From: Botryllus schlosseri
Lineage: Eukaryota
NCBI GenBank assembly: GCA_051294905.1
Contig: CM119384.1
Coordinates: forward strand, 24,738,001 to 24,802,000
DNA length: 64,000 bases
Direction of reading: 5' to 3'
Below the pieces are notes generated by a model that was given only the letters and a program-made list of their open reading frames with translations, was not told the DNA's origin and ran no database searches. Shown here piece after piece: positions 1,521 to 30,793 of the stretch. Numbering within the stretch: position 1 is the stretch's first letter; every line of letters begins with the position of its first letter. Both the position numbers and the translations under genes were made by a program.

Positions 1521-2008
1521 CTACACAGATAGCTCTTGGTATTGTGTCTGACTATGGCAGGATTGTGACACGGTTCTCAGAAGATATCGATACAATTTGT
1601 CGTTTTTGTCATATTTACTCTTGAAGAGGAAGCAGCTAATTTTCTCCAGTGATCCAATCACTTTGGGTGCCAGAGCGGTTTGCTCCTTGTGCAGGAAGAT
1701 GGTTTTGTGCTTCATATTGGATCGGCGATGGTATTGCAGCAACAGCTGGAATTCAGTTGGTTCGTTTTGGTCGGCACCGCTAGACAGGTCTATGAACATC
1801 ACGATCACGTTGTTGTTGTTTTTGATGCTGTTTTGGAACCATTGCTGAAGCCCAGCGCTGACGATGGCCTTTGTATTGCTCCAACTGCTTCGAATTTGTA
1901 TTCCGAGTTCTCTGCTTAGCTGCTCCATGGAACTGTGGATCTCTTCCGTTTGTTTTTGGTCGATTGTGTTTGCTATCGCAATGATGGTTGTTTTATCATG
2001 TCCGGTGC
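1521..2008 (-). CDS. SEFIR-like cytoplasmic exon of paralogue Y
   Basis: Acceptor tttttcaag at 2010-2009, open 162 codons to TAG. LSRELGIQIRSSWSNTKAIVSAGLQQWFQNSIK..VIVMFI aligns with the X SEFIR exon and with the SEFIR core pattern (I..G...W...I...D.VIV). Confidence 0.75.
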
Positions 2009-5000
2009 CTTGAAAAATTTACAGCTGATATAAAATGTTTTCTAGCACTTTTAATCCTGGCACACGAACCGTTCTTAACACCACAGATGATGCAGATATT
2101 GATATAAAATAACAAGTCAGGCCATATTCACTGATGTCATGATTAGTTATTGTTTAATTTATTGCTTTGCTGGCTAGTGAATGTACGTTACCCAATTGAT
2201 ATAAAAGGTCTCTGATAAAAAAATAACACTGAAAATCTATCCTACAGATTTTTAGCCAATCAAAAACTACATCAAATTATCTTATTCGAACTAGATTTTA
2301 GTAATCCAGACTCTTCTTTGCGATATGGTATTGAGTCATGTCTTTGTAAAGTCAAAGTGCTCACCATTGGATTTTCTGCTCTTCCGTCTTTTTATAACTA
2401 ATACAGTGATCGCTAGCATTATCATTATCATCGCTAGCATTACAGTGAACACGCTTGTAATGATGACAATCGATTTCGATGTGTTCGATCCCAATGCAAT
2501 TTGGTTAGCTGCAAGTGAAAGAAGTATTTCATCCACAAAATATTAACTTGATATCATTTGTTCCATGTTCACTCAACTGTCTGTTGTTAGAGATTCCCAT
2601 GCTGTTGTTGCTGTTGTGCTATCATGACTGCCAATCTTATCTTTGCCATCTGCGAAGTAAAATTTAGGGGTTATGTTTCATTCTGTGTATGGGTATCAGC
2701 TTTTGTGTGAATAATGATTGCAGAAAGGACAGTAGCCTATGAATAAAAAAATCTTACTGTTTCTGGATGAGCTGACAGCTTCTGGTGCGTTTGGCTTCTT
2801 ACTTTGTGTCTTGGCAATCTTCTTCTTCCCTGTCCGATAAAAATCATAATTGGTTTGCTGACTCTCTTGTGATGTTTGTAAATCCTGTAATTTTACTGGT
2901 TTTTGATTTACGCTTCCCTGCTTTCATCTTCCTTGTCTCTCTTCCTACATGAAAGGGAGAGTGACATTTACCATAATGTGACTCAGCCTGGTGCAGGAAT
3001 TTCATGCCTCTCGTAAAAAATTTTACAAACGAAAAGTGCAGCTGATCGGCGACTGTGCTTGTTTTAATGTGGTCACAATGTGGTGTAGAACTCTTTACGC
3101 CAGATGTTGTTTTATCAAACTTCCATGTGCATTTTGGCATCTTAGACAGACTGTCCATTTTAGATTGATCAAATTCTGTTAGACACTATTGATTAATGCC
3201 CACAGTGTCAAACAGATCAAATTATCCTTGTTACTAACAAATGAAAACCTTCTAGCGGGCTTGTACTGGACTTTGATGTTGATTTGATATTTGCCTTTCT
3301 GAAATTTGACGTTTCATACCAAATTGCCTTTTGTACCTGGGATTTTGAAATTCTTTGTAGCGATTTGGTCATGATCGTACGCCTTCGGAAGAGGAAGCCC
3401 CTTGACTTCTATTCGGATGGAGTCATCGGATCTGAACGGTGTTCCACAGCGTATGAAATTGAAATGCAGGAATGAACTCTGTCACAAAAGAGCTGCAGTG
3501 ATTACGTTCGCATTCTTTTCAAGGATGGTTGACTTGTACAAACTACTGTAATCAAGTTAGTTGGCAGTCAATCAACTACTATTTTTTGAGTACCGTAATT
3601 TTCCGAATATAGTGCGCCCCCATGTATAATGCACACCCTTAAAATGGCGTGTAAATTCTGGGAAAAAGCCTGTACCCGTGTATAGTACGCACCCTGCATT
3701 CGCAGTACATGAATACTGAAGAGTTGTGTTTTAGTACACGATGTTGTTCTGTTTTGCGATGTCACTGTCGAACAATGATGACATAAACATCGCTAATAAT
3801 CATAATACAATTAACGGCATTGTCTCTTAACGAGAGTAGATAGTAGCCAAAGCCTGCGAGGCTGGCGACGCGATAGTTCAGGCTAGCGACACACGACATC
3901 TTGCGCACGAGGCCTATTACAATTACAGATGCGATTGCTCAGGCCAACGGTTATGTCGGGTCGCACCAGTCCTGTTGGAGATTATAGCTTAGGCACATGG
4001 CCTCTTGTGTATGCGATTGTTAAGGCATGCACATCCCCTCTTGTGTATGCGATTGTTAAGGCATGTCGGTTGCGCGATGAATCAGCAAGGATTGCTGTGC
4101 ATGCTTGTAGCAATCAGCGACTTAATTTCGCTCGCGTACAAACGGCAAACTAACTCAGCAAGACATCGCGTGCTGTGCAGACGACACTCATTAATTGGAA
4201 ACACGCTTTCCGTTAATTGGCAACACGCTTCTGTATTTGGCAGCACGTTTCACTCTATAATACGAATTACGGGGCACGTTGGCTAGAGGTGAGTGGCGAT
4301 GCGCGATTGGGAACAAACATGAAGAAAGGTGTGAATTCAAGTTTTTGGTCAAGGGAGATTTTTTTCAAGGCTTGCTGTACCCATGTATAATACGCACCCC
4401 CCTATTTTAGAGCAAAAAATTGGTAAAATTTTGTGCATTATACGTGGAAAATTACGGTAGTTCTAATTCTAGTTCTAGTTGCCCACTATGAAAATCTAGA
4501 AGTTTGTACAAGTCAAAATCAGACGGGTTACATGGTGGCTTGCAGACTTCCTAGGTACTGGTACCTGGCCTCCCGACGTGGTGTATTGCGTTTTGTTCGG
4601 CGTGATCTTGAATCGAGATTTGTATTTGATGTAAATCTCGTTGAATTCAAATCCGATGATGTAGCCCTCGATGTCTCCGCTTATAATATCCGATTCTGTA
4701 ACAACATATGAAACGTTGGTGGCAATGTGGAAAAATGCGTGTCTTGGTCTACAAGTTGAGTTGAGTTGGTCTACAAAATTTACAGCTTTTCAAAGTTTGA
4801 TTTGATGCAGCATTACACAGATTCTTCTCAACTTTTATTCCAAATTAGATTAGAATTGAAATTACAGAATTTGCCAAGAAAATACTACAGAAATCAGGCG
4901 CAGTTCGTATCAAATCTGAGATTGTTCATAAGCACGAGAATGACAAATGCCGGTACACCAATCTTGGGCTCGGTTCGAATTAGTCAGTTCTCCTATAACA

Positions 5001-8000
5001 TTTTCAGAAAACCACAAATTAGACTATTGCTGGTAAGGTTTATGTATTCACTGTCATCATTTAGTGCTGTCAAATCTTGCAATGGTACTCACCAAATATT
5101 TACCCCGATATGGTTAAAGATGAAAAACGGGCTTGGACCGAGCAGTTTTGATTTCACTTGGCATCATTTTTATAAATCACGCTATTGTGGTGGACATCTT
5201 ACCTCTCTGCTTCCATGAGATATTCATTTTGTTTTCGTGTCTGTTCCAATCAATTGACAAACCTTCTGGAGCGGGTGCTGGGGCTTTTGTGTGGTCGGTT
5301 TCCTCGTACTTTGTGTCATCTAAACAGTGTGAAAAGCACTATAATGATAGCCCTGTCTCTGATTGCATTTTCAATGATAAGCTGGTATCTATTGATTCTT
5401 TTATAGATTATAGGATGAGGACTATATTGACTACTCCGAATCTTTGTTACCAGTAACATAGATGGCTTTTCCTTTTATTGGCTATGGATAGTTCTAGTTA
5501 TCTTAATTTTAGTAATCCGCTACCATTTCCATCTTTTGAATTTTTTCAATTTCCATTAATTAAAAACACTTTCAGCCCGGTTCATATTTGCTCCCATTGT
5601 GATTGCTATATCAAAATTGGATTGCCAAAACAAGTAAAGACACCAGTAAATTTCCATTTGCTTTGAGGGAATTGTTTTCTTAACCAAAGCAATGCTGACT
5701 CGCATATGTGTCACTCTCCATTTTAATATGAGGTTAGGGTTCTTGCTAATGCTGGTAGAAATGTTGGTGGTTGCATTATCTTAACTGAGAATAAATATCT
5801 CGTTGTGGGTTTAGAATTCATGTTGATTTGTCATTTCCGAAAGATTACGATATCGCAATCCTATTGTGGCTCAGCCACGGAAGTCAATGTGATTTCCAAG
5901 TAGGAGAAATCATTAGGAAAGCCAGTCTCCAGGTACCAGTAGTTGTTTACACCTACAATAAATTTACTGATTCTGATTTGTGAAAGTGATTATCAATTTC
6001 TTTGGTGTAAATCCACATCAATTTGATATGGTTTCGCTTTCGTTGTGAATGGAAAATATGCTGATTCGAAGCAGTCCTTTTTCAGAATTACTTGAGTGAT
6101 GGATTTCAATCAAGTTTTTGTGATCGGTGACATTTATTACGCTGTGACACACTGGCATTGAGTGGTATTTTTTCACATTTGATGAATTTCATAATGATCC
6201 ATCCAAGATGGGTTCACATTTAATAACACTGGGCAACAATTTTAAACAAAAAATTTGTTGATTTCGATTTGGCACTTGATTTAGGCTAATTTTGGCGTGC
6301 TGATTCCAGAAATGCCACTGGTTTTCTTCTATCACACCAAGTTTTTGCTCTACGACATATCCCCAAAATATGCAAATTTTCACGGATTTAGTCATATCAC
6401 TTTTCCATGCCATATAAAAATCCACACTTTTACCATATAATAAGTTATCTAGCCAAGGGTTCAATTGAATTATTAAGAATAAAGGTAGTGGTATCGATCT
6501 AGTAGGCCAATGCTTTCTCCCATTTTTGGTTAGAGGATGCAACCATCCGATGATATTTCACAGCACACATATTTGATGCAAACTGCAGGAGATGGCAAGA
6601 AAAATAATCATTACATTTACTCTCAGCTATGGGTTCAATGCCCCATTCAGCTTATCCGGTGTACCGTAATTTTCCATGTATAATGCGCAAAATTTTCACG
6701 ATTTTTTTCCCTAAAATCGGGGGGTGCGTATTATACATGGGAACAACACGCTTGAAAAAAATGCCTCGATAAAAAACTTGAAATCACACCTATCTTCATT
6801 CTTCATGTTTGTTTCCAATCGCGCATCACTTTCAGCCATCGTGCGTAGTAATTAGTGGGAAGCGTGTATCCAATTAACGAGAGTCGTGTGCAAAAGCACG
6901 CGATCTCCTGCTGAGTTGGTTTGCCGTTTGTACGCGAGCGAAATTAGGTCACTAATAAGACACTCGTGCGTGGCAATTCTCGCCAATTCATCGCGTCAAC
7001 GACAGGCCCGAACAATCGCATACGCAATTTATACATACACAAGAGGCCATGTGCGCAAGATATAATCGCTTGCGTAATCAGTCGCATCTCCGACAGACCT
7101 GTTGCGCATGACATAACCGTTCGCCTAGGCGCAATCGCATCTATAATAGGCATCGTGCGCAAGATGTCGGTTCGTTGGCCTAAACTAACTCGCCGCCGGC
7201 CTCGCAGGCGTTGGCTGCTATCTACTATCGTTTAGAGATAATACCGTTAATTGTATAATGATTAGCAATCGCATCTGTAAAAGGTCTCCTCGTGCTCAAG
7301 ATGTCGTGTCGCTAGCCTGAACTATCGCACCGCCCGCCTCGCAGGCTTTGGCTGCTATCTACTATCGTTTAAAGACAATCACGCTAATTGTATAATGATT
7401 AGCGATCGTTGAGTAATGATTGTTCAAGAGTGACATCGCAAAACAGAATGACATCGTATACGAAATCGGAACTATTCATGTACTGAAATGCAGGGTGCGT
7501 ACTATACATGGGTACAGGCTTTTTCCCAAAATTTACATGCTATTTTAGGGGTGCGTATTATACATGGGGGCGTACTATACTTGGAAAATTGCGGTCACTT
7601 TAAACTGCTATATGCTCGATAATTTGGATCAAGATGAAGATCTTAGGGATAGCAGGCCTAATGATGTAGATTTTGAAATTGAAAATGATTCAGAATGTAG
7701 AGTAGTCCATCAACACTAATTATTGATCTGACATAGGCTTTGGGACTTGGCATAGAAATTTTCGGAACTTTTTACATCCTTACAAAGTGAGAAAAGATTG
7801 CTTGGCAAGGTAGAGAAGGTATCTCACTTTCGATCAAGAGAATCAGCCTTTTCTTCGTTGGCCTATTTTCGGTAGCTTTGATTGCTGTGATTCTGGTATT
7901 GGCATGATACTGTCACCATGGATTACTGGAGGAGTTAGGAATCCCCATTAAGAACTCAAGTCAATGACAAATGCCTATAGGCAGCTCAAGAGGATCCTAA

Positions 8001-9336
8001 AGTGTGGCATTCTCTAAAATGGCAACATCTTAAGTGCAGTAACAATTGCACACTCAGTGACTCTTCGTGAATAATACAGAAACATTGAGAACAATACAGA
8101 AACATAGAATTGTTGCAATATTAAGAGCACAATTGGATCGTATGTGTCAGCTTTGAAACATTGTGTTTTCTTTGTTTTTCGGACAATAAGGATGCACGGT
8201 ACATGCAGCCCTGATACACATGTGCCACTGGCTCACTGCCATATGTTTATGTCGGACAGCAGACATTAAAAAAAAACTAAAATATCTTGATAATTTCCCT
8301 GAAGACCTTGACATAGTCAGAGATGGCCAAGGAGAAAATGTCTCCCAACATCTGAAGATGATGGGGATAAGATACCAGAGTAGATTTGAGCTTACATATG
8401 TTAGCTGATTGTTGCTCGAGTATCAAACTAGACAACCTACAGAATTATGGGTTATTAGCGTGAATTTGGACCCTGAAACTCGCACTTTATTTGTCCTGTA
8501 CAAGCAATATCAGTTTAAATCAACCAAATAAAGCAGTGCAAATGTTTATTTGAAGTCTAATGATTTACTTTCGACTGGTTGTAGTTTTTGAAACGTTTTA
8601 TACAATAAACACAAAATATTAAATGTAGTGCTATCATGTGGGTTTTGAGGCAATGTGGGGGTACCTAACGCAAAAACTTGACGTGATAGAGAAAAACGGA
8701 AGTCATTTTTGAATTCAGCGCCCAAAAGTTAGTCACAATCGATTGCCTGATCAAATTCAACAAAAACTGTGTTGACAAGTGTAATCCGTTAAAATGTAGT
8801 TTTCTACAAAGATGCTGTGAGTTTACTTAACTCAAATGTATCTGGAATGCCAAATTAAATGTTGATTTTCGTCACATTCACAAATCTATGTTTTGCCTAT
8901 TTCTGTCACTACAGGAACTTTTGTTTTCACCTTGGGCTTGTAACTCAATACTGAAATTCAATCCATGTATGTAGGTCATAGCACCTCAACATATCGCTGT
9001 GATGGTGAACCAATTCAAAACTTCCTACTTCTAAGTAACATTCTAGTTGCATAGGACATAGTTATGTTGTGTAACGGAATAAATTCCGGTTAAATGCGAA
9101 GACCGTGATCTCAATTTTGATGCATAGTTAGTAAATGCAATACTTTATCTCAGTTTCTACATCCACCTGTAGTGATTTCAGTATCGGCACTTACAGTTCA
9201 CATCGCAGGTGAAGTAGCTCCCATCTTCGAGGATGACGGATTCTTCCCTTTTGTAGCATGATGAATCACATCTTACTGTGGCTGCGGGATTTAGAAAACT
9301 CAGCATAAGCACTATATTGGTGACTTGAAAGCTCAT
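1521..9336 (-). CDS. IL-17 receptor-like SEFIR-domain type I membrane protein, paralogue Y copy A (potentially intact, ~514 aa spliced model)
   Basis: Phase-compatible GT-AG exons: 9336-9195 (signal peptide MSFQVTNIVLMLSFLNPAAT + C-x3-C-x10-DG-x4-C-x-V), 5319-5203 (PEGLSIDW..NISWKQ, FnIII-like), 4695-4565 (GDIEGYIIGF), 3478-3337 (IRIEVKGLP), 3175-2972, 2944-2912, 2829-2758, 2649-2578 (basic/S-T stalk), 2508-2365 (TM + KRRK), 2008-1521 (SEFIR). No stop in this chain. The exon1-to-5319 join and the 3337/3175 boundaries are inferred. Confidence 0.6.
3529..4516. mobile_element. CTAGAACTA-family MITE interrupted by a Tc1/mariner-type MITE
   Basis: Ends ttgacttgtacaaact / agtttgtacaagtcaa match the 1036-1507 family. 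A remnant without the nested insert is present in unit B (~21530-21605). Confidence 0.55.
3593..4457. mobile_element. Tc1/mariner (pogo/Tigger-like) non-autonomous element
   Basis: TIRs ccgtaattttcc / ggaaaattacgg flanked by TA (3591-92, 4458-59). Empty site in unit B (~21545). Internal 36-bp tandem at 4001-4065. Second copy inverted at 6664-7594. Confidence 0.85.
6227..8781 (+). mobile_element. Chapaev3-like (CMC) DNA transposon relic with decayed transposase
   Basis: Ends cactgggcaac / gttgacaagtg, ~120-bp imperfect inverted termini, 3-bp TAA TSD (6224-26, 8782-84), absent from unit B (~23300). Broken transposase pieces SELFTSLQSEKRLL..VSHFRSRESAF, HGLLEELGIPI, RILKCGIL*NGN, YLDNFPEDL..DGQGE..QHLKMMGIRYQ. 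Superfamily call rests on the TWA TSD and remembered motifs. Confidence 0.75.
6664..7594. mobile_element. Tc1/mariner-type MITE nested in the Chapaev3-like element
   Basis: ta|ccgtaattttcc ... ggaaaattgcgg. Reverse-complement homologue of 3593-4457. Confidence 0.8.
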
Positions 9337-10945
9337 AATTACTAAATACCAGTCGGGAAATGAAGTCAGTATTTTACACTGTAGGCAAAAGTTATGTTAA
9401 TTATCGACCTCTAGTATTTATCTCTGAAATCTTGCCTCTTCGTCTGCAAACCAGTTAGTAATATTTGCTTCTCATTTCTTATTATTCTAGTATTTGAGAT
9501 ATTTCACCATTCTGTACTCTCTACCAAACCTGGTATAATAACTCAAGATGTGTGAGTCAGCACCTCAGACTCTCTTCTACGGCTGGCTGAGGCTTCTGAT
9601 ATCGCACAACAATTGGTAAAACAAGTATATCTACCGCCTTTTCTCTCTTGTATTTTCCTTCTTTGATATTTGCTCAGACCACAAAATTTTGGTTGATTGA
9701 AAAGCATTTGATGATAATTTTGACAGTGTGACACTTTAACCTCCATTGCTTGGCACGAAGGTAGTAGGTACATCTACAGGTGGCCGAATATAAACCATCA
9801 TTGGCAATTGGCATAACTCATAAATATTACTATTCGGTGACTTCAAACAAGGTTTTTCTCATAAATATTGGTAGCCGTGATACATGTATTATAGTTCAAT
9901 AATATCTTACCACTTTAGCCTATAGACTATAAAAGTATCTTCCTATTTTATTGACTTAGTCTTCATGAATTTTCGTCTACTTGGAACATTAAATTTCAAC
10001 CACACTTTTTCTGAAAATATTGATGGCATATTACATCTGATCTGATAAGTAAAGATAAATTTCCATTCGCAATTAGTCATGAGATTACCATTTCCGTTGT
10101 AACAACACATATTAATGCAGCCTGGTAGCATACGACTTGAGTTTATTCTCCTGTAAAGTCTGTGTTTTATTTATTCCATTGGTATAAATGCCCTGAGGCC
10201 TGATATAAATACCCCTGGTAGATCCCATCCCATTGCATTTTGTAAAAGAAAATTTAATTTACTCCTTCATTATAAAAGAAGCTAATCAAAGCAGTTGTGT
10301 ATTTAGTACAGTTGATTGTTATCCCTAGCATGTCAATGCATCAAATGAAATCATACACCCTCATACTGGATGATAAGTCTTGCTAGTGCAACGAATGCAA
10401 TGCACTAGCAACTAATGTACAATTGCACATTTCTCTCCCATATCTAAAATTGGATTAGGGAAGTGTCTGTAAATTATAAATGCATCTTTGCGAATATGAA
10501 ACATGAAGTCGTCTTGAGCAATTCAAAATCATCATTTTCTCAATGATCAGCAACTTTTTGCAAAACATAATGTAATAAACTTCACAGATTTTGCTGCCAA
10601 TATCTGAGATATTGCAAATACGCCGTGCTTTCATGAATGTCCACATTTTAACGTGGATGTAAATCCCGATTATTTTGTGTAACTTGAAGTCCTGTCATCA
10701 GCCGATGGAGTATTCCATAGAATTAGCTATTATTTTGAATTTTCGTTTCAACATTCTGAAATTTCTGTTGACATGCACAGTGCATGAGTGTTAGAAGGAA
10801 GGGAGACTTTTGAATGCTTATTAATTCACAGGGATTACCGGGTCTAATCCAGCCCGAATGCAATCACTCTTCTGACACCAATATCTCGGCAACTCTTGTT
10901 GTTGCTGTGTAGGACCCATTTACTTGGCTTATTGCACTTTCGTTT

Positions 10946-11460
10946 TCAACCACGTGACCTCTTCATGCAAAGTCTTTTTATGTACTGAAAAAAGTCATCT
11001 TCCTCCGTGTAATCACTCTTCAAAGCAAACATTGTGAAATTCTTGAGTGCTTTGTGATCATTTGGTGGCTTGCTTTTAGATGCTTGCAGTAAAATACTCG
11101 TCTTTTGATTGCTATGCCTGTGATTAAAAAAGTGATTCCAGAATACTTGAAATTCCGTCTCCTGATCTTGATTGATTTGTGTTAAGGAGATGAAAATGAT
11201 GATGTCAGCCCTTTGAATCTCTCTTTGAAACCAAGGCAGCGACCCTATGAGGCTTATTTGGTTTCGATCTCTCCAATTACTTCGCATTGTAAGCCCAAGA
11301 TGTTGTGACATGATTTCCATTGTTGTGTGATACCTTTGGACCTCGTCAGAGTCTTCCATGTTGGCTATGGCAAGGATTTCTTTCAGGCCTGCGAAAATAT
11401 GATAGTCGTGTGTGGATATCCATGATAACGGATAGGCTATTGAGATTTTGGGCTGTGAAC
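10946..11460 (-). CDS. SEFIR domain exon of paralogue X (copy A)
   Basis: Acceptor ttcttag, 171 open codons. PKISIAY ~ SEFIR box1 PKVFIVY. RDRNQISLIGSLPWFQREIQRADIIIFI ~ SEFIR core (NEIAEIGPVAWLERQIQEADKVIVV, recalled consensus). Confidence 0.82.
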
Positions 11461-14400
11461 CTAAGAAGAAGTAATGTAGAAATAACTTTATGGCTTTCAC
11501 TTGTCATCAGTATAAAATGATTTGATAACATCACTTCTTTAGACTAGCAGTTTTTATATACTAAAAACTCCCATCCAAGCTTATGCCATTGAATGAAATG
11601 AGGAAATAGGAATGCTTATCTTGAAATGGTTTCAGGGAGGCTTATGTACATTTAAGTAGACTCAGATTGATTTGAAATTGTGATAACATTGCCTCATTGC
11701 CTAAGGAAAGATATGTTTCCCACAGAAAAATATGTCATACTGTTAGTGTCAGAATCTGAGCCAAATTGTTCCCCAGCGATTGCTAATTTCATTAATTTTT
11801 TAGTTTTTGTCCAGCTATCAATGTTACTTGAAAAATAGCTGCATGCTTTAATTAATACTAGTATATATATCGTGATTGCAATTTTGTGAGTGATCGTACC
11901 TCTCTTCCGTTTCTTCCACATAATCACGGCCACTGTCACAGATATTGTTAGAGTGACTAGCAAAAACGATGCTACAACGGGAATCCCCAGGCCACCTGTA
12001 AAGGCATTGACAGAACTGTGATTTCATATCACCTGGTTTTGTTTCTCTAAGTTCACTTGCGAAGCCATGGCAATCTACTGTCTGGAGTGAAATCATTTGT
12101 CACAATAAGATCCTTACCATTACCTGTTTTTCGTCGTGTGATGGTGTTTGTATTGACTGGAAGATTTGCTGCAAAAGAATGTGAAGAGTGACCTTTCGAC
12201 CTCCCTACCAAGTCAATATGTCATGTGGTACATACTTGCTGTCGCAGTCCCAGTGCATTCTTCTATTTCTATAGAATGAAAGTAGTATCAGTTTGAGTTT
12301 GCCAGACAGGGAACAATAAGTAACCTCTGCAATGATTGTAAATATAGAAAATTTTCACCAGTCCAAAGTTGCAACAAAGCAACACAATGGTACGTGGAGA
12401 CAGATAAGAGATGGTAGATTATTTTTTGCTTTCCCGGAAGCTCCTGTTAACCAGTGCATTCTTCTTCAACCACCATGCAGAGCAAAGTAATTGTTACTTT
12501 TGTTGCAAGCTAAGTCACTCATTCAGTACTGAATCCACATCCTGCATTGAGGGAGAAAACTTATCTAAAATCTGTCAATTCACTCACGTGACCAGTGCTC
12601 TTTGCATTCCCTATACTTTGTTGTGTTGATGAATGCTAGCTGTCGTCCTGACTTGTCCGTGCATTCTGAAGTATTGCATTTAATTATGATGCGTCCATTC
12701 TCGGATAGGTTACTTTACATGGGTTAGATTTGTTGAATTCATGATAAACATGATATCAGTAGCATATTTTTGGTTTTGTAGCCACCATTAGAACAAATGC
12801 CGTTATGTCTGTGTTGTGGTCTGTTAAATGAGCATGTCTAGGTTGAAGTCTAAACATCACATACCCAGAACAATAACAATTCATTCAAAGGCTGTTGGAT
12901 AAAATGAAAAGCATTAATGACTTTTATACCAGAACACAATGAGTAGCAAAATACATTGTTGGCTCCATGATAACTGCGCTCTGCGCTTATATTCAAGTAA
13001 ATATGCACAAGCACAGGGGATGTTTTATGTATTGATTTGCAATTTTATCGTAATATTCTCGAGGTCTAATCGATATCATCGATTCATCATTACTAGTTCC
13101 AAATATGCCTGGTTGCTCTGAACAGGGCATGAAATTCTCCATAGATCATCAGTGCTATTTAAATATGAAACCCACTTGGTATTTTCACATCTGCACTTAT
13201 CCTTCCTATCTTATGATTCATGTCTGCTGGCGGAATGGAATCAATGGTGACTTGTCTCTGCTCTTTCGGATGCAGGTAGTCAAGTTGCGTGATTCCGTGG
13301 CACAGAAATTGGAAAGCTATGTAGTTGTACTGAAACAATGATAACAAAGCTACTTAAGATATGGGATATAATGACAACTACACTTGTAAGCTCAGCTATA
13401 ATAATCAAAATAGGTGGGAACGATATATGACAACATAGTTTATTTGTGTTTTTGTAATTTATGCGGATATACCTGGAAACTAATCAAGAAATTTTGACGA
13501 AGGCCATGTTACTTAATAGATACGTCAAACTGCAATCGAATAATGAGTTTTATGGTTCCTAAAAACATTTATTTCACCCCTCATGAACTGTTGCATATGA
13601 TGTACTGGACTTTATTCCTAATTTGACAGCAAAAGAAGTGAGCATTCAAAATCCAGATAAAAGTAAATATAGAATATTAAGGCTGGGCACAATTAGGCGC
13701 GTACCCTAATCTGAATTGAGAATTATTACGAATGATTTGAGTCAAGTAGTGAGGGATGATATTTTCGAGTACTGAAATTACACGCTCCTTGCCACAAATT
13801 TATCAACAAGAAATCATAGTTTCGGTGCTATTTTCCACTGTAAAACCTGGATTGGTCGTATCGTAGCATACTATGCCTGTAGTTCAATGAAAATAACATT
13901 TTTGTGAAGTTGTTATGACAGTTTGTCACGAAGTGCGATGAAATAAATATGGTTGAAACAATACCAAGTCATGAATGTGATGTAGAATTGATATTATATC
14001 CTTTGTCGCCTTGCATGAAAGCTTCATTTTGTCAATGCTGCATGTATGAAGAGGGCCACTAGCGCCACCTTGTTGTGACTCCAGGATGCATATTCTCTGA
14101 GCTACCAATATGACAATTGTCTTCATTCATTTGGTCTCACTTCTCTAAATTTAGGAATGTAAAGCTTGTACCTTAACTTTATCCCGTCTTCGAACTTCTT
14201 TGTGCCTTTTTCCCTTCTTCCGTACTCTCACCTTGTATCTCATCGTCATTTCACCCTTTATCACTGTGAGATAGTAACCACGCACATCTTCCATATCCCA
14301 TGCTGAAAAAGTTTGCTAACATTGGACATGGTTGAATTGAAAGTTGGTTACAGTCACAGAATTTCTGCCCTTCATGCAATTTCTCATGATGCTATGTTTT

Positions 14401-15407
14401 GATTACACTGCTTCCATTTGGAAATTTCGTCACTGAATCACACAAGTGAGATTTCCATTACTGAAAATGCCAGTCTGAGATTCTGGTTCGTTTACTTGGC
14501 AGAGCAGAAAATGTATGCAGAAGATGTACGTACAATTATTCTAGTCTCTAAAAATGTTTTCACCATGTTCACTGGGATTACATTCCTAATCTCATTTGGG
14601 TTGCCTGTCCAATTCGCATTGTTCAGTTTTCATAGCCAGACAGGTTAAATTTTGTACATCCTAAATGAATAATCCACCCACCTTTTTGCTTCCATGTTAT
14701 ATTGAGTGCTATGCTCTTGTTATTGTGGACATACCACATGTTGCCAGTAATTAGTTCTGGTTGAGGTGCTATGCCTTTCTTGTGTGCTCTGGGTGGTTTG
14801 TCTACCACTGTAATGCAAACATATGCCTCATCAGAGTGCAGTGGTGTTTCTTGGCAGCGCTATTGCACTGTTGGTTCTTGGCAGCGCTATTGCACTGTTG
14901 GTTCTACAAAAGTTTCTTGTAACCTTCCTTAAAATACTTAAACATTGACTGCTGTATCATTGGTATTTTAAGGAGTATAGTAAATCAAAGTAGGTAAGGT
15001 ATATGTTTCTTCAAGATGAATTCCAGAGTAACATGGCTTTGCTATAGCCTGCAGGAATGATGCTAATATGCATCCCTGTCCAGGATATGGCCCTTTAATT
15101 ATTGCACAGGAAACGTTCACAATTACAACAGTCAACGGCCCTAACCACTCAGGTGATCAGTGTAAATTCATGTTTGATACGGAGCTGGCTTTAACCTTAT
15201 GCTCAGGCCAGATTTCCCAACGAACTTTGTTATGAACTGAAAGAATTAATCCTTACTTGAAACATTGCAATAAAGCTTCCGCCCGTCATGCAATGGAATG
15301 TAATCTTTTTGTTCATGACACTCCGATCTGCATTGCAGTGTTTTCGTTACCAAAGCTTCACAATCCAACAGCACCAGGTAAATACACAGGGCGGTAAAAA
15401 ACTTCAT
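10946..15407 (-). pseudogene. IL-17 receptor-like paralogue X copy A (ectodomain disrupted, TM and SEFIR exons open)
   Basis: Signal exon from ATG 15407 (MKFFTALCIYLVLLDCEA + C-x3-C-x10-DG-x4-C-x-V), exon 14807-14682 (LNITWKQK), TM exon 11995-11900 (GLGIPVVASFLLVTLTISVTVAVIMWKKRKR), SEFIR exon 11460-10946. I could not find a stop-free exon chain through 14.5-12.1 kb. Confidence 0.55.
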
Positions 15408-19927: not shown

Positions 19928-20223
19928 CAGGGTTGTAATGACTCGAATCATGATGAACTCAAGTTGCAATCTTATGCTGACTTGTACAGCTCTACTCGAG
20001 TCATTGAAAATGACTCAACCAAGTCATGTGACTCGACATATTCTATATTATATATTCAAGTTTCTTTTGGCAGGACCAATAATTGAAAAATGGACCCAGA
20101 AACTGTGTTGATATGTTTGTATAATCATGTTTAGAGTGAGAAAATGAGTATGTTATGAGTGCAAGGCTTTCGATATCACCCAACAGTTCCACAGTTAAGT
20201 GAGTTGAACCTCACTTGAACTCG
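19928..20223. mobile_element. GACTCGAGTC-rich MITE, truncated at the duplication junction
   Basis: Left end cagggttgtaatgactcg. Homologous to the complete copy 36017-36350, but similarity stops at ~20223. Confidence 0.72.
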
Positions 20224-20443
20224 ATACTAAACAGTAAACATTATTACTTGGATTACTTACCTAATTAATATGAAAGGTCCAGGGGCGACGAACTTTGATA
20301 AAAAAGAGCACTGAAAATCTATCCTACAGATTTTTAGCCAATCAAAAACTGCATCAAATTATCTTATTCGATTTAGATTTTAGCAATCCAGGCTCTTTGC
20401 GATATGGTATTTAGTCAAGTCTTTGTAAAGTCAAAGTGCTCAC

Positions 20444-23400
20444 CATTCGATTTTCTGCTCTTCTGTCTTTTTATAACTAATACAGTGATCGCTAGCATTA
20501 TCATTACAGTGAACACGCTTATAATGATGACAATCGATTTCGATGTATTCGATCCCAATGCAGTTTGGTTAGCTAAAAATGAAAGAACTATTTTATCCAC
20601 AAAATGTTGACTTGATATCAATGTTCACTCAACTGTCTGAAGTTAGAGATTCCCATGTTTTTGTTGTTGTTGTGCTATCATGACCACCAATCTTATCTTT
20701 GCCATCTGTGAAGTAAAATTTAGGGGTTATGTTACATTCTGTATATGGTTATCCGCTTTTGTGTGAATAATAATTGCAGAAATGACAGTAACCTATGAAT
20801 AAAAACATCTTACTGTTTCTGGATGAGCTGACAGCTTCTGATGGTGGCTTCTTACTTTGTGTCTTAGCAATCTTCTTCTTCCCTGTCCAATAAAAATCAT
20901 AATTGCTTTGCTGACTTTATTGTGATGTTTGTAAATCCTGTAATTTTACTGTTTTTTGATTTACGCTTTCCTGCTTTCATCTTCGTTGTCTCTCTTCCTA
21001 CATGAAAGGGAGAGCGACATTTACCATAATGTGACTCAGCCTGGTGCAGGAATTTCATGCCTCACTTAAAAAATTCTGACTGTGCTAGTTTTAATGTGGT
21101 CACAATGTGGTGTAGAACTCTTTACGCCAGATGTTGTTTTATCAAACATTCATGTACATTTTGGCGCCTTAGGCAGACTATCCAGTGTAGATTGATCAAA
21201 TTCTGTAAGGCACTATTGATTAATGCCAACAATGTCACACAGATCAAATTATCCTTGTTACTGACAAATGATAACCTTCTAGCGGGCTTCTGGACTGTGA
21301 TGTTGATTTGAGGTTTGCCTTTTTGAAATTTGATTTTTCAAACCGAATTACCTTTCGTACCTGGGATTCTGAAATTCGCTGTAGCGATTTGGTCATGATC
21401 GTACGCTTTTGGAAGAGGAAGCCCCTTGACTTCTATTCGTATGGAGTCATCGGGACTGAACGCTGTTCCGCAGCGTACGAAATTGAAATGCAGGAATGAA
21501 CTCTGTCAAAAAGGTGTTGGCAGTGATTAAGTACTATTATTTTTAGTAGGTCTAGTTCTAGTTTTACTTGCACATTTTTAGAATCCAGTAGTTTGTATAA
21601 GTCTGATTGGCTAGTTGCAAAATCAGACAGGCTACATGATGGATTACAGAACATACTTCCTATGTACTGGTACCTTGCCTCCTGACGTGGTGTGTTGCGT
21701 TTTGTTCGATGCGATTTTGAATCGAGATTTGTATTTGATGTAAATCTCGCGCAATTCAAATCCGATGATGTAGCCCTCGATGTCTCCGCTTATAATATCC
21801 GATTCTGTAACAGCATATGAAACGTTGGTGGCAATGTGGCAAAATGTAGGTCTTGGTAGCAGTGTTGGTCTGCTACAAAATTTACAGCTTATCAAAGTTT
21901 GATTTGATGTGGCATTATAGCAAAACAAAATCTTTTTGAAGTTTTCAAAGATGCTTCTCAACTTGTATTCCTGAATTTGCCAAAGAAATACCACAGAAAT
22001 GAAGTTCATAAGCGCGAGAATGGCAAATGCCCGATTGCCCGTGCACCAATTTTGGGCTTGGTTCGCACTATACAGTTCTTCTTCAACATCTCAAAAAAAA
22101 CCGTAACTTAGATTATTACTGGTATGGTATATGGGTTCACTGTTATCATTTAGTGCTGTCCAATCTTGCAGTGGTACTCACCAAATATTTACCCTGATAT
22201 GGTTAATGATGAAAAAACAGGCTTGGACCGAGCAGTTTGGATCTCACTTGGCATCATTTTTATAAATCACGCGATTGTGGTGGACATCTCACTTCTCTGC
22301 TTCCATGAGATATTCATTTTGTTTTCGTTTCCGTTCCAATCGATGGACAAACCTTCTGGAGCAGGTGCTGGGGATTTGGTGTGGTCGGTTTCCTCGTACT
22401 TTGTGTCATCTTAACGGTGTGAAACGCACTATAATGATAGCCCTGTCTCTGATTGCATTTTCAATGATAAGCTGTTAATTATTAATGTATAGGTCATAGG
22501 ATGAGCACCATATTGACTACTCTAAATCTTCGTTACCAGTAACATAGATGGCTTTTCCGTTTATGGGTTATGAGTGGTTCTAGTTAACTTAATTTTAGTA
22601 ATCCGGTATCATTTCCATCTTTTGAATTTTTGCAATTACCATTCATTAAAAATAATTTCGGCCAGGTTCATATTTGCTCCCAATGTGATGGCTATTTGAA
22701 AATTGGATTGCCAAAACCAGTAAAGACACCAGCAAATTTCCATTTGCTTTGAGGGAATTGTTTTCTCAACCAAAGGATTGCTGACTCACATATGTATCAC
22801 TGTGAGCTTAGGGTTCTTGCTAATGTTGGTAGAAATGTTGGTGGTTGCATTATCCTAACTGCGAATAAATATAATCTTTATGGGTTTAGAATTCATGTCG
22901 ATTTGTCATTTCCGAAAGATTGCGATATCGTAATCCCATTGTGGCTATTGTGGCCGCGGAAGTAGATATGATTTCCAAGTCTAAGAAATAATTTGGAATG
23001 ACAGTCTCGAGGTAGTTGTTTACACCTGCATTAAATTTCCTAATTCTGTTTTGTGAAAGTGATTATCAATTTCTGTGGTGTTAATCCACATCAATTTGAT
23101 ATAGTTTTTCTTTCGTTGTGGATGGAAAATGAGCTGATTTGACGCATTGCTTTTACAGAATTACTTTAGTGATGGATTTAATCAAGTTTTTGTGATCGGT
23201 GACATTTATTATGCTGTGACACACTGTCATTGAGTGGTATTTTTTCACATTTGATAAATTTCATAATGATCCATCCATCCAAGATGGGTTCACATTTAAT
23301 AATTACAGTAGTTAAAATGTAGTTTTCTACAAAGATGCTGTGAGTTTACATAACTCAAATGTAGTTGCAATGTCAAGTTAAGTGTTGCTTTTCGTCACAT

Positions 23401-23851
23401 TCACAAATCTATGTTTTGCCTATCTATCTGTCACTACAGCAACTTTTGTTTTCACCTGGGGCTTGTAACTCATTACCTAAATTCAATCCAATGTAGGTCA
23501 AAACACCTCAACATATCCCTGTGATGGTGAACCTACTATAAAGTTCCTACTTCTAAGTAACATTCTAGTTGCATAGTTATGTTGTGTAACGGAATGAATT
23601 CGGGTTAAATGCGAAGACTGTGATCTCAATTTCAATGCATCGTTGGTAAATGCAAAACTGCATATCAGTTTTTACATCCACCTGTAGTGATTTCAGTACC
23701 AGCACTTACAGTTCACATCACAGGTGAAGTAGCTCCCATCTTTGAAGATGACTGATTCTTCGCTTTTGTAGCATGATGAATCACATCTTATTGTGACTGT
23801 GGGATTTAGAAAACTCAGCATAAGCACTATACTGGTGACTTGAAAGCTCAT
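20444..23851 (-). pseudogene. IL-17 receptor-like paralogue Y copy B (truncated pseudogene, no SEFIR exon)
   Basis: Signal exon 23851-23710 and TM exon 20572-20444 are intact. TGG>TGA nonsense at 21152-21150 and a ~26-bp frameshifting deletion near 21075 relative to copy A. The unit ends ~190 bp past the TM exon, before the SEFIR exon. Confidence 0.78.
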
Positions 23852-25858: not shown

Positions 25859-26373
25859 TCAGCCACGTGACCTCTTCATGCAAAGTCTTTTTATGTGTTG
25901 AAAAAAGTCATCTTCCTCTGTGTAATCACTCTTCAACACAAACACTGTGAAATTCTTCAGTGTTTTGTAATCATTTGGTGGCTCCCTTTTAGATGCTTGC
26001 AGTAAAATACTTGTCTTTTGATTGCTATGCCTGTGATTGAAAAAGTGATTCCAGAATACTTGAAATTCCGTCTCCTTCTGATCTCGATTGATTTGTGTTA
26101 AGGAGATGAAAATGATGATGTCAGCCCTTTGAATCTCTCTTTGAAACCAAGGCAGAGACCCTATGCAGCTTATTTGGTTTCGATCCCTCCAATTACTTCG
26201 CATTGGTAGCCCGAGACGTTGTGACAGGATTTCCATTGTTATGTGATACTTTTGGACCTCATCAGAGTCTTCCATGTCGGCTATGGCAAGGATTTCTTTC
26301 AGGCCTGTGAAAAAATGATAGTGGTGTGTGGATATCCATAACAGATAGACTATTGAGCTTTTGGGCTGTGAAC
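25859..26373 (-). CDS. SEFIR domain exon of paralogue X (copy B)
   Basis: Acceptor ttctcag, 171 open codons. ~87% aa identity to the copy A exon, with two single-codon indels. Confidence 0.82.
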
Positions 26374-27218
26374 CTGAGAAGTAATGTAGAAATAACTTTA
26401 TCACTTTTGCTTGTCATCAGTATGAAATGATTAGATAACATGACTTCTTTCTACTAGCAGTTTTTATATACTAATAACTCCCATGTAAACTTATGCCATT
26501 GAATGAAATGAGGAAATAGGAATGCTTATCTTGAACTGGTTTTAGGGAGGTTTATGTACATATAAGCAGAGTCAGACTGATCTCGAAATTGTGATAACAT
26601 TGCCTAAGGAAAGATATGTGTCCCACAGAAAAATATGTTATACTCTTAGTGTAGGAATCTGAGCCAAATTGTACCCCAGTGATTGCTAATTTCATACATT
26701 TTTTAGTTTTTGTCCAGCTATCAATGTCACTGGTAAAAATAGATGCCTGCCTTAATAAATACTACTATATATCGGGATTGCAATTTTGTGAGTGATCGTA
26801 CCTCTCTTCCGTTTCTTCCATATAATTATGGCCACTGTCACGGATATCGTTAACGTGACCAGCGAAAACGATACTACAACGGGAATCCCCAAGCCACCTG
26901 TAAAGGCATTAACAGAACTGTCATTTCATGTGGAATTTTGCCTGGTCTTGTTTGTTTAAGTCCGTGGCAATCTATTGTCTGGTGTGAAGTCATTTGTCAC
27001 TATTAGATTCTTACCATTACCTGTTTTTCGTCTTGAGGTGGTTTTTGTATTGACTGCAAGATTTGCTGCAAAAGAATGTGAAAAGTGACCTTTCGACCTC
27101 CCTACCAAGTCAATATGTCATGTGGTACATACTTGCTGTCGCCATACTGGTGTATTCTTCAATTACTGTAGAGTGAAAGACTTGTTGGTTTGTTTTCCAG
27201 ACAGTGAACAATAGTTGA

Positions 27219-27266
27219 ATGGTTGTAAATATGGTTGTAAATATGGTTGTAAAAATGGTTGTAAAA
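27219..27266 (+). repeat. 12-bp minisatellite (atggttgtaaat) x4
   Basis: Four adjacent units, expanded only in unit B. Confidence 0.8.
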
Positions 27267-30200
27267 TATCTAAAATTTTCACCACAACCAAGTTGCCAAA
27301 AAGTAACACAATACGAGGCCAAGGTAATTTGAGACAGATATATGAGATTGTTGTTCATTTTTGCTTCCCTGGAAGCAGCTGTTTACCAGTCATTCTTCTT
27401 CACCACCACACTGAGCAAGGTATTGTTGCTTTCTGAGTCACTCATTTCTTCTATACTGAAGCCATGTCGGATATAGGGATAGGAATCCTAAGTTGATGGG
27501 TGTATAGGAATCTCCAGCGAGGCATATAAATATAAGCTAGTCCTACTCATCAATTTTTTTTCAAACAATCCAGTCTAGAACAAATGAACCCTACCAATAA
27601 GAGCCTGCATTGAGGGTAAAATTGATATCATACCAGTCAATTCGCCGCCTACATCACCAGTGCTCCTTGCATTGCCTCCACTCACGTTCTGTCCTGTTAA
27701 TGAATGATAGCTGTTGTCCTGACTTTTCCATGCATTCTAAAACATTGCTTCCAATCATGGTACATCTATGCTCAGATAGATTACTTTATATGGTTTGGAT
27801 TTTCATGCTAATCATGACATAGTAGCCTATTTTTAGTTTTATCGCCACCATTTGGGGAACAAATGCATTTCTTTCCGTGTTGAGCTATTTTAAGATGAGC
27901 ATATCTGTGTTCATGTCTAAATGTAGCATACCCAGACTAACAATATTCCATTTGAAAGCTGTCTGATAAAAGGGAAAGCATTGCTTTTATGCCAGAGCAT
28001 AATGAGCGGCAAAATGCATTTTTGTCCACATGATAACTGCTTATTCAAATAAATATGCACAGGGGGTGTTTTATGTTTTGCTTTCCAATTATAGCATCAC
28101 ATGATCGAGGTCTAATCGCTATCATCTATTCATCATTACTGGTTTCAAATATTCACCTCACATGGTCCCTCTGAATAGGACATGAAATTCGCCATAAATC
28201 ATCAGTGCTATTAAAATATGGAACGCACTTGGTATTTTCACGTCTGCAGCTATCCTTCCCATTCTATGATCCATGTCTGCTGGTGGAATGGAATCGATGG
28301 TGACTTGTCTCTGATCTTCTGGCTTCAGGTAGTCAAGGGTGAGTCCGTGGCAGAGAAATTGGAAAGCTATGTAGTCATACTAAAACAATGATAACAAAGT
28401 TATTCACGATATCATGGGATATAATGACAACTGCAACTTGTACGTCCAGCTATAATAATCAAAATAGGTGTAATGCCGTGTAAACGATATATGACAACAT
28501 TGTTTATTTGTGTTTTTGGTAATTTATGCTTATTTACAATCTCAGCAAGTGGAGAAATTTTGACGGAGGCCATGTTACATAATAAAGATGTCATACTGCA
28601 ACCAAATAATTAGTTTAATGGTTCTTGAAAACATTTATTTCACCCCCTCATGAACTGTTGCATATGCTGTACTTGACTTTATTATTAATTTGACTGCTAC
28701 AGAAGTAAGCCTTCAATATCCAGATAAAGGCAAATATAGAATATTTGGGCCGAGCACAATGATTCGCATACTCTAATATCAATTGATAATTATTACGAAC
28801 GATTTAAGTCGAGTAGTGAGGGATGATATTTTCGAGTACTGAAATTGCACGCTCCTTGCCACAAATTTATCAACGAGAAATCACAGTTTTGATGCTATTT
28901 TCCACTGTAAAACCTGGATTGGTCGTATCGCAGCATACGAAACCTGTAATTCAATGAAAATAACATTTTTGTGAAGTTGTTATGACAGTTTAGTGCGATG
29001 AAATAAATATAGTTGAAAAGATAACAAATAATCATGAATGTGATGTAGAATTGATATTATATTCTTTGTGGCCTTGCATGAAAGCTCCATTTTGTCAATG
29101 CTGCATTATGAAGAGGGCCACTAGCGCCACCTTGTTGTGGCTCCAGAATGCATATTTTCTGAGCTAGCAGTATGACAATTGTCTTTGTTCATTCCGTCTC
29201 ACTTCTCTAAATTTAGGAATGTAAAGCTTGTACCATAACTTCATCCCCTCTTAGAACTTCTTTGTGTCTTTTCCCCTTCGTCCGCACTTTCACATGGTAT
29301 CTCATCGTCATTTCACCCTTTATCACTGTGAGATAGTAACCTCGCACATCTTCCACATCCCTTGCTGAGAAAATTTCCTAACATTCAATGTGGTTAAATT
29401 GAAAGTTGATCACAGTCACAGAATTTCTGCCCTTCATGTAATTTCTCATGGTGTTATGTTTTGATTACGCAGCTTCCATTTGGAAATTTCTTAACTGAAT
29501 CACATAAGTGAGATTTCCATTACTGATAATGCCAGTCTGAGATTCTGGTTTTGGATTTTGTTTACTTGGCAGGGCACAAAATGTATGCAGAAGATGGGTA
29601 ATTATTCTAGTCTCTGGAAATTCTTTTCACCATGTTTAGGCTACTGGGAATACATTCCTAATCTCATTTGTGTTGGCTGTGAAATTCACATTGGTCAGTT
29701 TTCTTAGCCAGACAGGTTCGATTGAAGGATTGACTTGCATGGTCTACATCGTAAATGAATAATCCACCCACCTTTTTGCTTCCATGTTATGTTGAGTGCT
29801 ATGGTCTCATTATGGTGGACATACCACATGTTGTCGGTAATTAGTTCTGGTTGAGGTGCTATGCCCTTCTTGTGTGCTCTGGGTGGTCTTTTTGGCGCTA
29901 TAACGCAAACATGCCGTATCAGAGTACACTGGTATTTATCGGCCACACTATTGCTCTGCTGGTTCTACAAAAAAGTTTCTTGTAACCATCCTTACAATAC
30001 TTGAACATTGACTGCTGCTGCATTGGTATTTTAAAGAGTATGGTAAATCAAATTGGGTAATATCAGAGTAGCATGGTATTGCTATATTGCCTGCAGGATT
30101 GATGCTAATATCCATCCCTGTCCAGGATGTGGCCCACACGAAAACGTCACAATTACAACAGTCTACAGCCTTAATTACTCAGATGATCTGTTTAAATTCA

Positions 30201-30793
30201 TGTTTGATACGGAGCTAGCCTAACCTGATGCTCAGTCCGAATTTCCCAACGAACTTTGTTATGAACTGATAGAATTTAACCTTACATGAAACATTGCAAT
30301 AGAGCTTCCGTCCGTCTTGCAGTAGAATGTAATCTTCTTGTTTATGACACTCCGATATGCATTGTAGTGTTTTCGTCACCAAGGCTTCACAATCCAACAG
30401 CATTAGGTAAATACACAGGGTGGTAAAAAACTTCATTAGCTCCTCAGTTTCCCAATATCTGACTAGTATAGGATATGTAAAATAAATTCCAGATATTATT
30501 CATCACATAACGTACTAGATCTTGTATCTAAAGCTTAATGAATATACAATTTTGTCACACAAAACAGGCAAATACTCCAGAGTACCTAGTAATCCTTTAA
30601 AAGGAGTAAAATGCACATACTGAAGTTCTGGCAGATTGATTCAGGAAACTCTCATGTAGATATGGAATATAACTATAAAGTTAGTTTAGAAATGTTTGCG
30701 TTTTCTAGGAATTATTCTACCTGCTAGCACCTTTCCAACCCAGTATTAGCTACAGGTATTAAAACTATCGCAGATGGAAAACATAGTCCGATC

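What the first reader, a model, noticed from the sequence alone, without database searches (positions are those of the whole stretch)
1521..9336. Y-A may be a functional short receptor made by splicing out its own decayed ectodomain sequence
Past the signal exon, the read-through sequence still looks like coding: VPILKSLQVDVETEIKYCIY*LCIKIE aligns with RLGQLRIKHE reconstructed from the two X copies. It carries a frameshift shared by both Y copies, several stops and, in A, a 2.5-kb transposon. The codons TGT-AAG also form a gtaagt donor (phase 1), which joins in frame to the acceptor at 5319 and gives an unbroken ~514-aa ORF. All TE insertions in Y-A fall outside these exons. Inference: old exon sequence has become intron, producing a receptor with a shortened ectodomain.
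Basis: partly seen in the sequence, partly recalled or inferred. Interest (0 to 1): 0.7.

Follow-up and report, generated by a model that had tools for sequence, protein, structure and literature searches.

The report
Ordinary intron in IL-17-receptor-like gene
The predicted splice is real and the sea-squirt gene looks intact and expressed, but the spliced-out stretch is an old, ordinary intron swollen by jumping genes, not a decayed piece of the receptor, so the finding is ordinary.

Summary
Y-A (window 9336..1521, minus strand) is an intact multi-exon gene. It encodes a signal peptide, a Cys-containing N-terminus, an FN3-like region, a TM helix and a 161-aa alpha/beta tail that resembles SEFIR only remotely.

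What held up:
- The gtaagt donor at 9194, the acceptor before 5319 and the phase-1 in-frame join are all there.
- One public contig (212 nt, run X1) joins exon 1, exon 2 and exon 3 at exactly these sites.
- GT-AG models give an unbroken ORF of 503-528 aa.
- All TE insertions lie in introns.
- Against Y-B, the exons show a synonymous excess and no frame-breaking indels (each p about 0.02).

What did not hold up is the central inference, that exon sequence decayed into intron and shortened the ectodomain:
- Both X paralogues carry a GTAAG donor at the same aligned position and phase. They also have a phase-1 acceptor before the homologous exon 2.
- The spliced exon 1+2 products of X and Y align colinearly across the junction.
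- The X/Y split is older than the split from another ascidian-like species.
- Y intron 1 and X intron 1 are no more alike than shuffled sequence, as DNA or translated.

Intron 1 is therefore ancestral, enlarged in Y-A by a 2.56-kb nested TE. Y-B is a copy that was truncated when it was duplicated. Other notes of this scan describe further IL-17R-like clusters in this genome.

The parts
9195..9336 (-). Y-A exon 1: ATG, signal peptide, Cys-containing N-terminal segment; ends in phase 1
   Evidence: Sequence read. Its last 38 nt are joined to exon 2 in the X1 contig. Only two copies exist in the genome, Y-A and Y-B.
5320..9194 (-). Y-A intron 1 (3,875 nt; gtaagt...ag), an ancestral phase-1 intron
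   Evidence: The donor is conserved in X-A and X-B at the same aligned position. No similarity to X intron 1 above shuffles. No contig depth in any run over 5320-6159.
6227..8787 (.). 2,561-bp TE-like insertion in intron 1, absent from Y-B; inverted ends 6236-6348 / 8670-8782; possible TAA target duplication
   Evidence: Contig depth is well above the flanks.
6662..7595 (.). Nested MITE-like element with short terminal inverted repeats (TACCGTAATTTTCC type)
   Evidence: Depth of 100-1200 in contig runs shows it is multi-copy.
5203..5319 (-). Y-A exon 2 (phase 1 to 1), start of the FN3-like region
   Evidence: Both borders are used in the X1 contig. Homologous to X exon 2.
4565..4695 (-). Y-A exon 3 (phase 1 to 0)
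   Evidence: The 4695/5203 joint is seen in X1 and X4. The X4 contig piece ends exactly at 4565.
3592..4459 (.). Second copy of the MITE-like element, in intron 3, absent from Y-B
3337..3478 (-). Y-A exon 4 (end of the FN3-like region). The donor is predicted at 3336; an alternative donor at 3319 would leave an impossible 21-nt intron.
   Evidence: Prediction only.
2758..3175 (-). Two predicted exons whose inner borders are ambiguous: 3175-3027 + 2884-2758, or 3175-2897 + 2829-2758
   Evidence: Both paths keep the frame open. No RNA evidence was obtained.
2578..2649 (-). Predicted Ser/Thr-rich stalk exon (phase 1 to 1)
   Evidence: Prediction only.
2365..2508 (-). Transmembrane exon: hydrophobic helix followed by KRRKSRK
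   Evidence: Y-B has an in-frame 15-nt deletion here.
1521..2008 (-). Last exon: 161-aa alpha/beta cytoplasmic domain (remote SEFIR/TIR-like) and TAG stop
15257..15407 (-). X-A exon 1, ending in phase 1 before GTAAGG (donor G at 15256)
14682..14807 (-). X-A exon 2 (phase 1 to 1), homologue of Y exon 2
30286..30436 (-). X-B exon 1, ending in phase 1 before GTAAGG (donor G at 30285)
29772..29897 (-). X-B exon 2 (phase 1 to 1)
20293..23851 (-). Y-B: truncated duplicate of Y-A. It has exons 1-4 and the TM exon but no cytoplasmic exon, has lost one candidate acceptor, and has a 26-nt deletion.

Best explanation
Y-A is an ordinary, intact and transcribed member of a small, fast-evolving ascidian family of IL-17-receptor-like type I membrane proteins. 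The parts are a signal peptide, a Cys-containing N-terminus, an FN3-like region, a stalk, a TM helix and a remote SEFIR/TIR-like tail.

Its first intron (9194-5320) is a phase-1 intron that was already present before the X and Y paralogues separated. In Y-A it grew from about 1.3 kb to 3.9 kb when a 2.56-kb nested transposon inserted. Splicing exon 1 to exon 2 is simply the normal structure of this gene family and removes nothing that relatives keep.

Shown: the splice junction, the open frame, donor and acceptor conservation in X, and the lack of intron similarity.

Inferred: that the protein acts as a cytokine receptor signalling through its SEFIR-like tail.
For: - Splice sites and frame are as described.
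- The X1 contig (212 nt) joins exon 1, exon 2 and exon 3 at 9195|5319 and 5203|4695. X4 also has the 5203|4695 joint, and its contig piece ends exactly at 4565.
- The contig is not a processed copy in DNA. Exon 1 occurs only at Y-A and Y-B in the 495-Mb genome. The extra exon 2 copies on C3 carry intron flanks.
- GTAAG is invariant across YA, YB, XA and XB at the same alignment column.
- X-A and X-B have phase-1 acceptors before exon 2, at 14807 and 29897.
- Spliced exon 1+2 of Y against X scores 104-120 in BLOSUM62, against a shuffle mean of 29 (sd 5). The alignment is colinear and the split codons face each other.
- The intron-to-intron comparison is at chance.
- The tree gives (YA, P0001, P0002) | (XA, XB, P0003) with 99/99 support. 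P0001 and P0003 come from one foreign sample, so X/Y is an old duplication.
- Y-A against Y-B: dN/dS is 0.43 with a synonymous excess (p=0.015). None of 19 frame-breaking indels falls in the confident exons (p=0.018).
- ORFs of 503 or 528 aa are open under GT-AG models.
- The tail folds at pLDDT 77 into a 5-stranded alpha/beta domain. IL-17RC, RB, RE and RD and the IL-17RA/RB/ACT1 complex are among the best fold matches. hhalign to bona fide SEFIR exons of the same genome gives probability 62%, E 7.6e-5.
Against: - The RNA evidence is a single low-depth contig (4.8) from a run whose RNA status is only guessed. One bulk RNA-seq run of raw reads (X17) gave almost no reads on the exons.
- The exon 1 end of that contig differs from the reference at 4 of 38 bases. 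I read this as an allele; 9196, 9205 and 9228 are shared with an X4 contig.
- Splicing of the X copies is inferred from sequence only.
- No orthologue from another species reaches exons 1-2; the contigs were too short.
- The exon 4 to exon 7 borders are not settled.
- SEFIR membership is not established. Pfam gives nothing for Y-A and only E 0.08-0.12 for X.
Confidence: 0.85

Rival explanations
1. In the Y lineage an ectodomain exon decayed, a fortuitous gtaagt inside TGT-AAG became a new donor, and the decayed sequence is now spliced out. The result would be a receptor with a shortened ectodomain.
For: The donor overlaps in-frame codons and the junction is used. X-B happens to stay open for 23 codons past the site.
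Against: - The same GTAAG donor, at the same position and phase, is present in both X copies. X-A has a stop four codons past it.
- X exon 2 has matching phase-1 acceptors.
- There is no gap at the junction in the Y/X alignment.
- Intron similarity to X is at chance.
- The Y-A/Y-B identity of the first 150 intron bases (90%, with gaps) is like that of the other introns.
Confidence: 0.03
2. Exon sequence turned into intron earlier, before the X/Y duplication, so all four copies share a derived intron that replaced an older N-terminal domain.
For: Nothing positive. It is only not excluded, because no relative outside X/Y could be examined at exons 1-2.
Against: - No residual coding signal in any of the four introns.
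- The architecture of a Cys-containing N-terminus running straight into the first FN3-like region resembles, from my own knowledge, what canonical IL-17 receptors have.
Confidence: 0.04
3. Y-A is a transcribed but non-functional relic. The open frame is a leftover and the spliced contig is background transcription.
For: - Very low expression.
- Its sister Y-B is clearly defective.
- The tail is too divergent for Pfam SEFIR.
Against: - A 9-exon frame of more than 500 codons is open with canonical sites.
- Synonymous excess and avoidance of indels in exons.
- Y-type tails are conserved in other species at 33% identity with 17 invariant columns.
Confidence: 0.08

Closest known systems
Invertebrate 'degenerated' IL-17 receptors (double-FN3 / TM / SEFIR type I receptors; PMC11087794)
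   Same: - Type I layout with a signal peptide, an FN3-like ectodomain, a single TM helix and a C-terminal alpha/beta tail.
- That paper reports that about half of the IL-17Rs in most subphyla have FN3 and often SEFIR domains too diverged for domain models, as seen here.
- Fold matches to IL-17RB, RC, RD and RE SEFIR.
   Different: - Pfam SEFIR is not reached.
- Only one FN3-like module is evident by eye, and the second ectodomain module is short and uncertain.
- Only three relatives were found among 1.84 billion representative proteins.
Intronization (exon sequence recruited as intron; described in the literature, cited from my own knowledge, not read here)
   Same: A donor that overlaps codon-like sequence, and an in-frame join.
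   Different: Every defining feature that could be tested failed: the donor is shared with old paralogues, the intron has no coding remnant, and no residues are missing at the junction.
TE-driven intron expansion and partial tandem gene duplication
   Same: - Intron 1 tripled in size through a nested DNA-transposon/MITE insertion.
- The X-Y pair was duplicated as a unit of about 16-18 kb with a breakpoint inside Y's last intron.
   Different: Nothing unusual.

Membership tests
IL-17 receptor family | Type I membrane protein: N-terminal signal peptide and a single TM helix followed by basic residues | tested here: met
   Read directly from the spliced ORF models: a hydrophobic N-terminus, then a 26-residue hydrophobic segment followed by KRRKSRK.
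IL-17 receptor family | Ectodomain of two FN3 domains | tested here: inconclusive
   Pfam on single-exon pieces gave no hit. The spliced ectodomain has no reference, so it was neither scanned nor folded. One FN3-like stretch is visible by eye only.
IL-17 receptor family | Cytoplasmic SEFIR domain | tested here: inconclusive
   - Pfam SEFIR: no hit for Y-A; X gives E 0.08-0.12, 13-14 bits against a cut-off of 23.
- hhalign to genuine SEFIR exons of the same genome: probability 62%, E 7.6e-5.
- The AF2 model (pLDDT 77) matches IL-17R SEFIRs at E 3e-4 to 3e-3 and TM 0.5-0.64, interleaved with other flavodoxin-like folds.
- Atlas features point to TIR/SEFIR clusters.
IL-17 receptor family | Binds an IL-17-type ligand and signals through a SEFIR adaptor | not testable with these tools
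   Needs a binding or signalling assay.
Intronization (exon turned into intron) | The homologous stretch is exonic in relatives outside the lineage | tested here: not met
   In X-A and X-B the homologous interval is also an intron (449 and 388 nt) closed by stops. No other species could be examined.
Intronization (exon turned into intron) | The splice sites are derived in the lineage | tested here: not met
   GTAAG is invariant at the same column in YA, YB, XA and XB. Phase-1 acceptors sit before exon 2 in all four.
Intronization (exon turned into intron) | A residual coding signal in the intron, and residues missing from the product at the junction | tested here: not met
   Intron against intron is at the shuffle level. 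The spliced Y and X products are colinear across the junction.
Functional (non-pseudogene) gene | Open frame, spliced transcript, purifying selection | tested here: met
   - The ORF is open under GT-AG models.
- One spliced contig covers exons 1, 2 and 3.
- dN/dS is 0.43 (p=0.015) and frame-breaking indels avoid the exons (p=0.018).
- The evidence is modest in amount.

The most novel reading that the evidence does not exclude
The shared phase-1 intron of the whole X/Y family arose by intronization of an older N-terminal ectodomain segment before X and Y separated. Under this reading these ascidian IL-17R-like receptors would be a lineage with a secondarily reduced ectodomain, perhaps a single FN3-like module. 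Nothing positive supports this. It is only not excluded, because no more distant relative could be examined at exons 1-2.
Probability: 0.04. Interest if true: 0.45.

Novelty: new member of a known kind. Interest (0 to 1): 0.12.

Why it matters
It matters mainly as a correction. The apparent 'exon turned intron' is the product of reading through a conserved donor site.

What remains is a correctly delimited, intact and weakly expressed member of a very divergent ascidian IL-17-receptor-like family, next to a copy that was truncated when it was duplicated. This is useful for annotating tunicate immune receptors. It fits published reports that invertebrate IL-17 receptors often diverge beyond domain-model detection. 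It opens no new question.

Tried and rejected
- Pfam on the Y-A tail and on single exons gave nothing useful.
- phmmer and hmmsearch against PDB sequences gave only chance-level hits.
- An exhaustive phmmer of the tail against 1.84 billion representatives gave only three short single-exon hits. Their contigs (907 nt, 4.5 kb without DNA, 6.2 kb) do not reach exons 1-2, so no cross-species test of the intron was possible.
- Raw reads of one bulk RNA-seq run (X17, about 6% read) gave almost no reads on the exons, so they neither support nor refute the junction.
- Gene models a and b, which use the donor at 3319, were rejected because they imply a 21-nt intron. Models c and d replace them.
- I considered a processed retrocopy as the source of the spliced contig and rejected it.
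- A DNA alignment of the four copies shows scattered matches past the donor. The shuffle tests show these are alignment noise.
Full report
**Layout of the window**

The window comes from a 495-Mb, 219-contig assembly (contig C14) that earlier notes of this scan call sea-squirt-like. Four related genes lie on the minus strand:

| gene | span |
|---|---|
| X-B | 30436..25862 |
| Y-B | 23851..about 20293 |
| X-A | 15407..10949 |
| Y-A | 9336..1521 |

They result from one tandem duplication of an X-Y unit, with 2210-20223 corresponding to 20293-36282. The breakpoint lies in Y's last intron. Y-B was therefore born without the cytoplasmic exon, which has no match elsewhere in the window.

**Check of the observation**

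- The ATG is at 9336. Exon 1 ends at 9195 and is followed by gtaagt. The acceptor ag is at 5321-5320 and exon 2 starts at 5319. The join is phase 1 and in frame.
- Relative to Y-B, Y-A carries 2,561 extra bases at 6227-8787. They have about 113-bp imperfect inverted ends. Nested inside is a 934-bp MITE-like element (6662-7595).
- A second copy of that element (3592-4459) lies in intron 3. Both insertions are intronic.
- My first models used a donor at 3319, which implies an impossible 21-nt intron. Using the CAG|GTACAA donor at 3336 instead gives two fully GT-AG models of 503 and 528 aa. Both have no internal stop and all introns are 67 nt or longer.
- The borders between exon 4 and the stalk exons remain predictions.

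I laid three contig runs and one raw RNA-seq run on 4480-9500.
- In run X1 a 212-nt contig (depth 4.8) holds 57 nt of exon 3, all 117 nt of exon 2 with one mismatch, and 38 nt of exon 1. The joints skip 4696-5202 and 5320-9194, that is at GT..AG on the gene strand.
- The tool places the second joint at 9199 with four letters in between. These four letters fit positions 9195-9198 with changes at 9196 and 9198. The 9196, 9205 and 9228 variants also occur in an unspliced X4 contig. I therefore read them as a non-reference allele.
- Run X4 has the 4695/5203 joint as well, and its contig piece ends exactly at 4565, the predicted exon 3 donor.
- The runs are only guessed to be RNA. However, a processed DNA copy is unlikely. 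Exon 1 occurs only at Y-A and Y-B in the genome, and the four extra exon 2 copies on contig C3 carry intron flanks.
- The raw RNA-seq run gave almost no reads on the exons, so expression there is low. No run shows depth over 5320-6159, so there is no sign of a hidden exon in intron 1.

**Is intron 1 decayed exon?**

- An alignment of the four exon 1 regions shows GTAAG invariant at one column: AACT|GTAAGT in Y, TCAA|GTAAGG in X-A and TCAT|GTAAGG in X-B.
- Upstream of the X homologue of exon 2 there are acceptors (ttacag in X-A, ttatag in X-B) that leave two bases before the first full codon, which is phase 1. X exon 2 also ends in phase 1, as Y's does.
- Joined in this way, X exons 1+2 are open. 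They align colinearly with Y exons 1+2, with the split codons facing each other and no gap at the junction. BLOSUM62 scores are 104-120 against 29 +/- 5 for shuffles.
- Read-through in X is closed. X-A stops four codons past the donor and X-B stops after 23 codons.
- The best local alignments of Y intron 1 (TE removed, 1,313 nt) with the X introns (449 and 388 nt) are at or below the shuffled controls, both as DNA (164-200 of 200 shuffles reach the score) and in three-frame translation (19-80 of 100).
- Between Y-A and Y-B, the first 150 intron bases are 90% identical with gaps, like the other introns.

**Age of the X/Y split**

- The Y-A tail found only three relatives among 1.84 billion representatives, all short single-exon calls.
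- A tree groups Y-A with P0001 and P0002, and the X copies with P0003, at 99/99 support.
- P0001 and P0003 come from the same foreign sample. X and Y therefore separated before that species split from this one, and the shared donor is at least that old.

**Is Y-A under constraint?**

- Over exons 1-4, Y-A and Y-B differ by 15 synonymous and 26 non-synonymous changes. This gives dN/dS 0.43, and the synonymous excess has p=0.015.
- Of 29 indel events in the gene body, only one falls in the confident exons, and it is an in-frame 15-nt deletion in Y-B. None of the 19 frame-breaking events falls in an exon (p=0.018).
- Y-B itself has lost a candidate acceptor (CAG to CAA) and has a 26-nt deletion in a predicted exon. 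Much of the constraint is therefore probably on Y-A.

**What the protein is**

- The tail has no Pfam match for Y-A. The X tails match SEFIR only at E 0.08-0.12.
- The genome has nine genuine SEFIR matches elsewhere and none in this window.
- A profile of the six tails against four of those genuine SEFIR exons gives hhalign probability 62% and E 7.6e-5 over 96 columns.
- An AlphaFold model (pLDDT 77, pTM 0.76) is a five-stranded alpha/beta domain. Its best matches include IL-17RC, RB, RE (TM 0.64) and RD, and the IL-17RA/RB/ACT1 assembly. These are mixed with receiver domains and other flavodoxin-like folds.
- Language-model features point to TIR/SEFIR clusters.
- Taken with the signal peptide, FN3-like region and TM helix, this fits the 'degenerated' IL-17 receptors described in PMC11087794. 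Membership is not proven.
- The ectodomain before the TM helix is about 285-310 residues in my models. From my own knowledge this is not short compared with canonical IL-17RA and IL-17RB. Only one FN3-like module is evident by eye, and I could not fold the spliced protein.

**Verdict**

The splice and the intact gene are real. The proposed origin by decay of exon into intron is not supported. Intron 1 is an ancestral phase-1 intron enlarged by transposons.

Noticed in passing
window 2210-20223 and 20293-36282: The X-Y pair was duplicated in tandem as a unit of about 16-18 kb (74-91% identity). The breakpoint lies inside Y's last intron, so Y-B never had the cytoplasmic exon.
   Followed up: partly
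window 20293-23851 (Y-B): Y-B keeps the exon 1 and exon 2 splice sites. It has CAG>CAA at a candidate acceptor (about 21323), a 26-nt deletion in a predicted exon (opposite Y-A 3050-3025) and a 15-nt in-frame deletion in the TM exon. It is probably a pseudogene.
   Followed up: partly
L006:7929-8133, L007:7902-8106, L008:6573-6790, L009:7905-8140 (G000 contig C3): A 207-bp piece of Y (exon 2 plus about 60 and 30 nt of flanking intron; window 5379-5173) occurs four times on contig C3 at 90-95% identity. It sits inside a repeated unit of more than 6.5-10 kb (L006 and L007 are 99.8% identical over 10 kb), directly next to an opposite-strand ORF with Kelch repeats. This looks like a gene fragment carried along by a large duplicated or mobile unit.
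   Followed up: partly
window 9195-9232: Public contigs carry a non-reference allele at the end of exon 1 (9196, 9198, 9205, 9228). Two of its states equal Y-B's, which suggests shared polymorphism or gene conversion between the copies. Codon 47 would change from Asn to Glu.
   Followed up: no
window 15407-14682 and 30436-29772 (X-A, X-B): Exons 1 and 2 of both X copies join in frame through canonical sites. The 'broken ectodomain' noted for X elsewhere in the scan may therefore, at least at this end, come from reading through introns.
   Followed up: partly
G000 contigs C1, C2, C3, C11, C12: Nine places in the genome match Pfam SEFIR above the cut-off, including four within 65 kb on C11. None is in this window.
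   Followed up: no
window 8747-9384 and 5042-5183: Run X4 has unspliced contigs over intron 1 and intron 2 at a depth similar to the exons.
   Followed up: no
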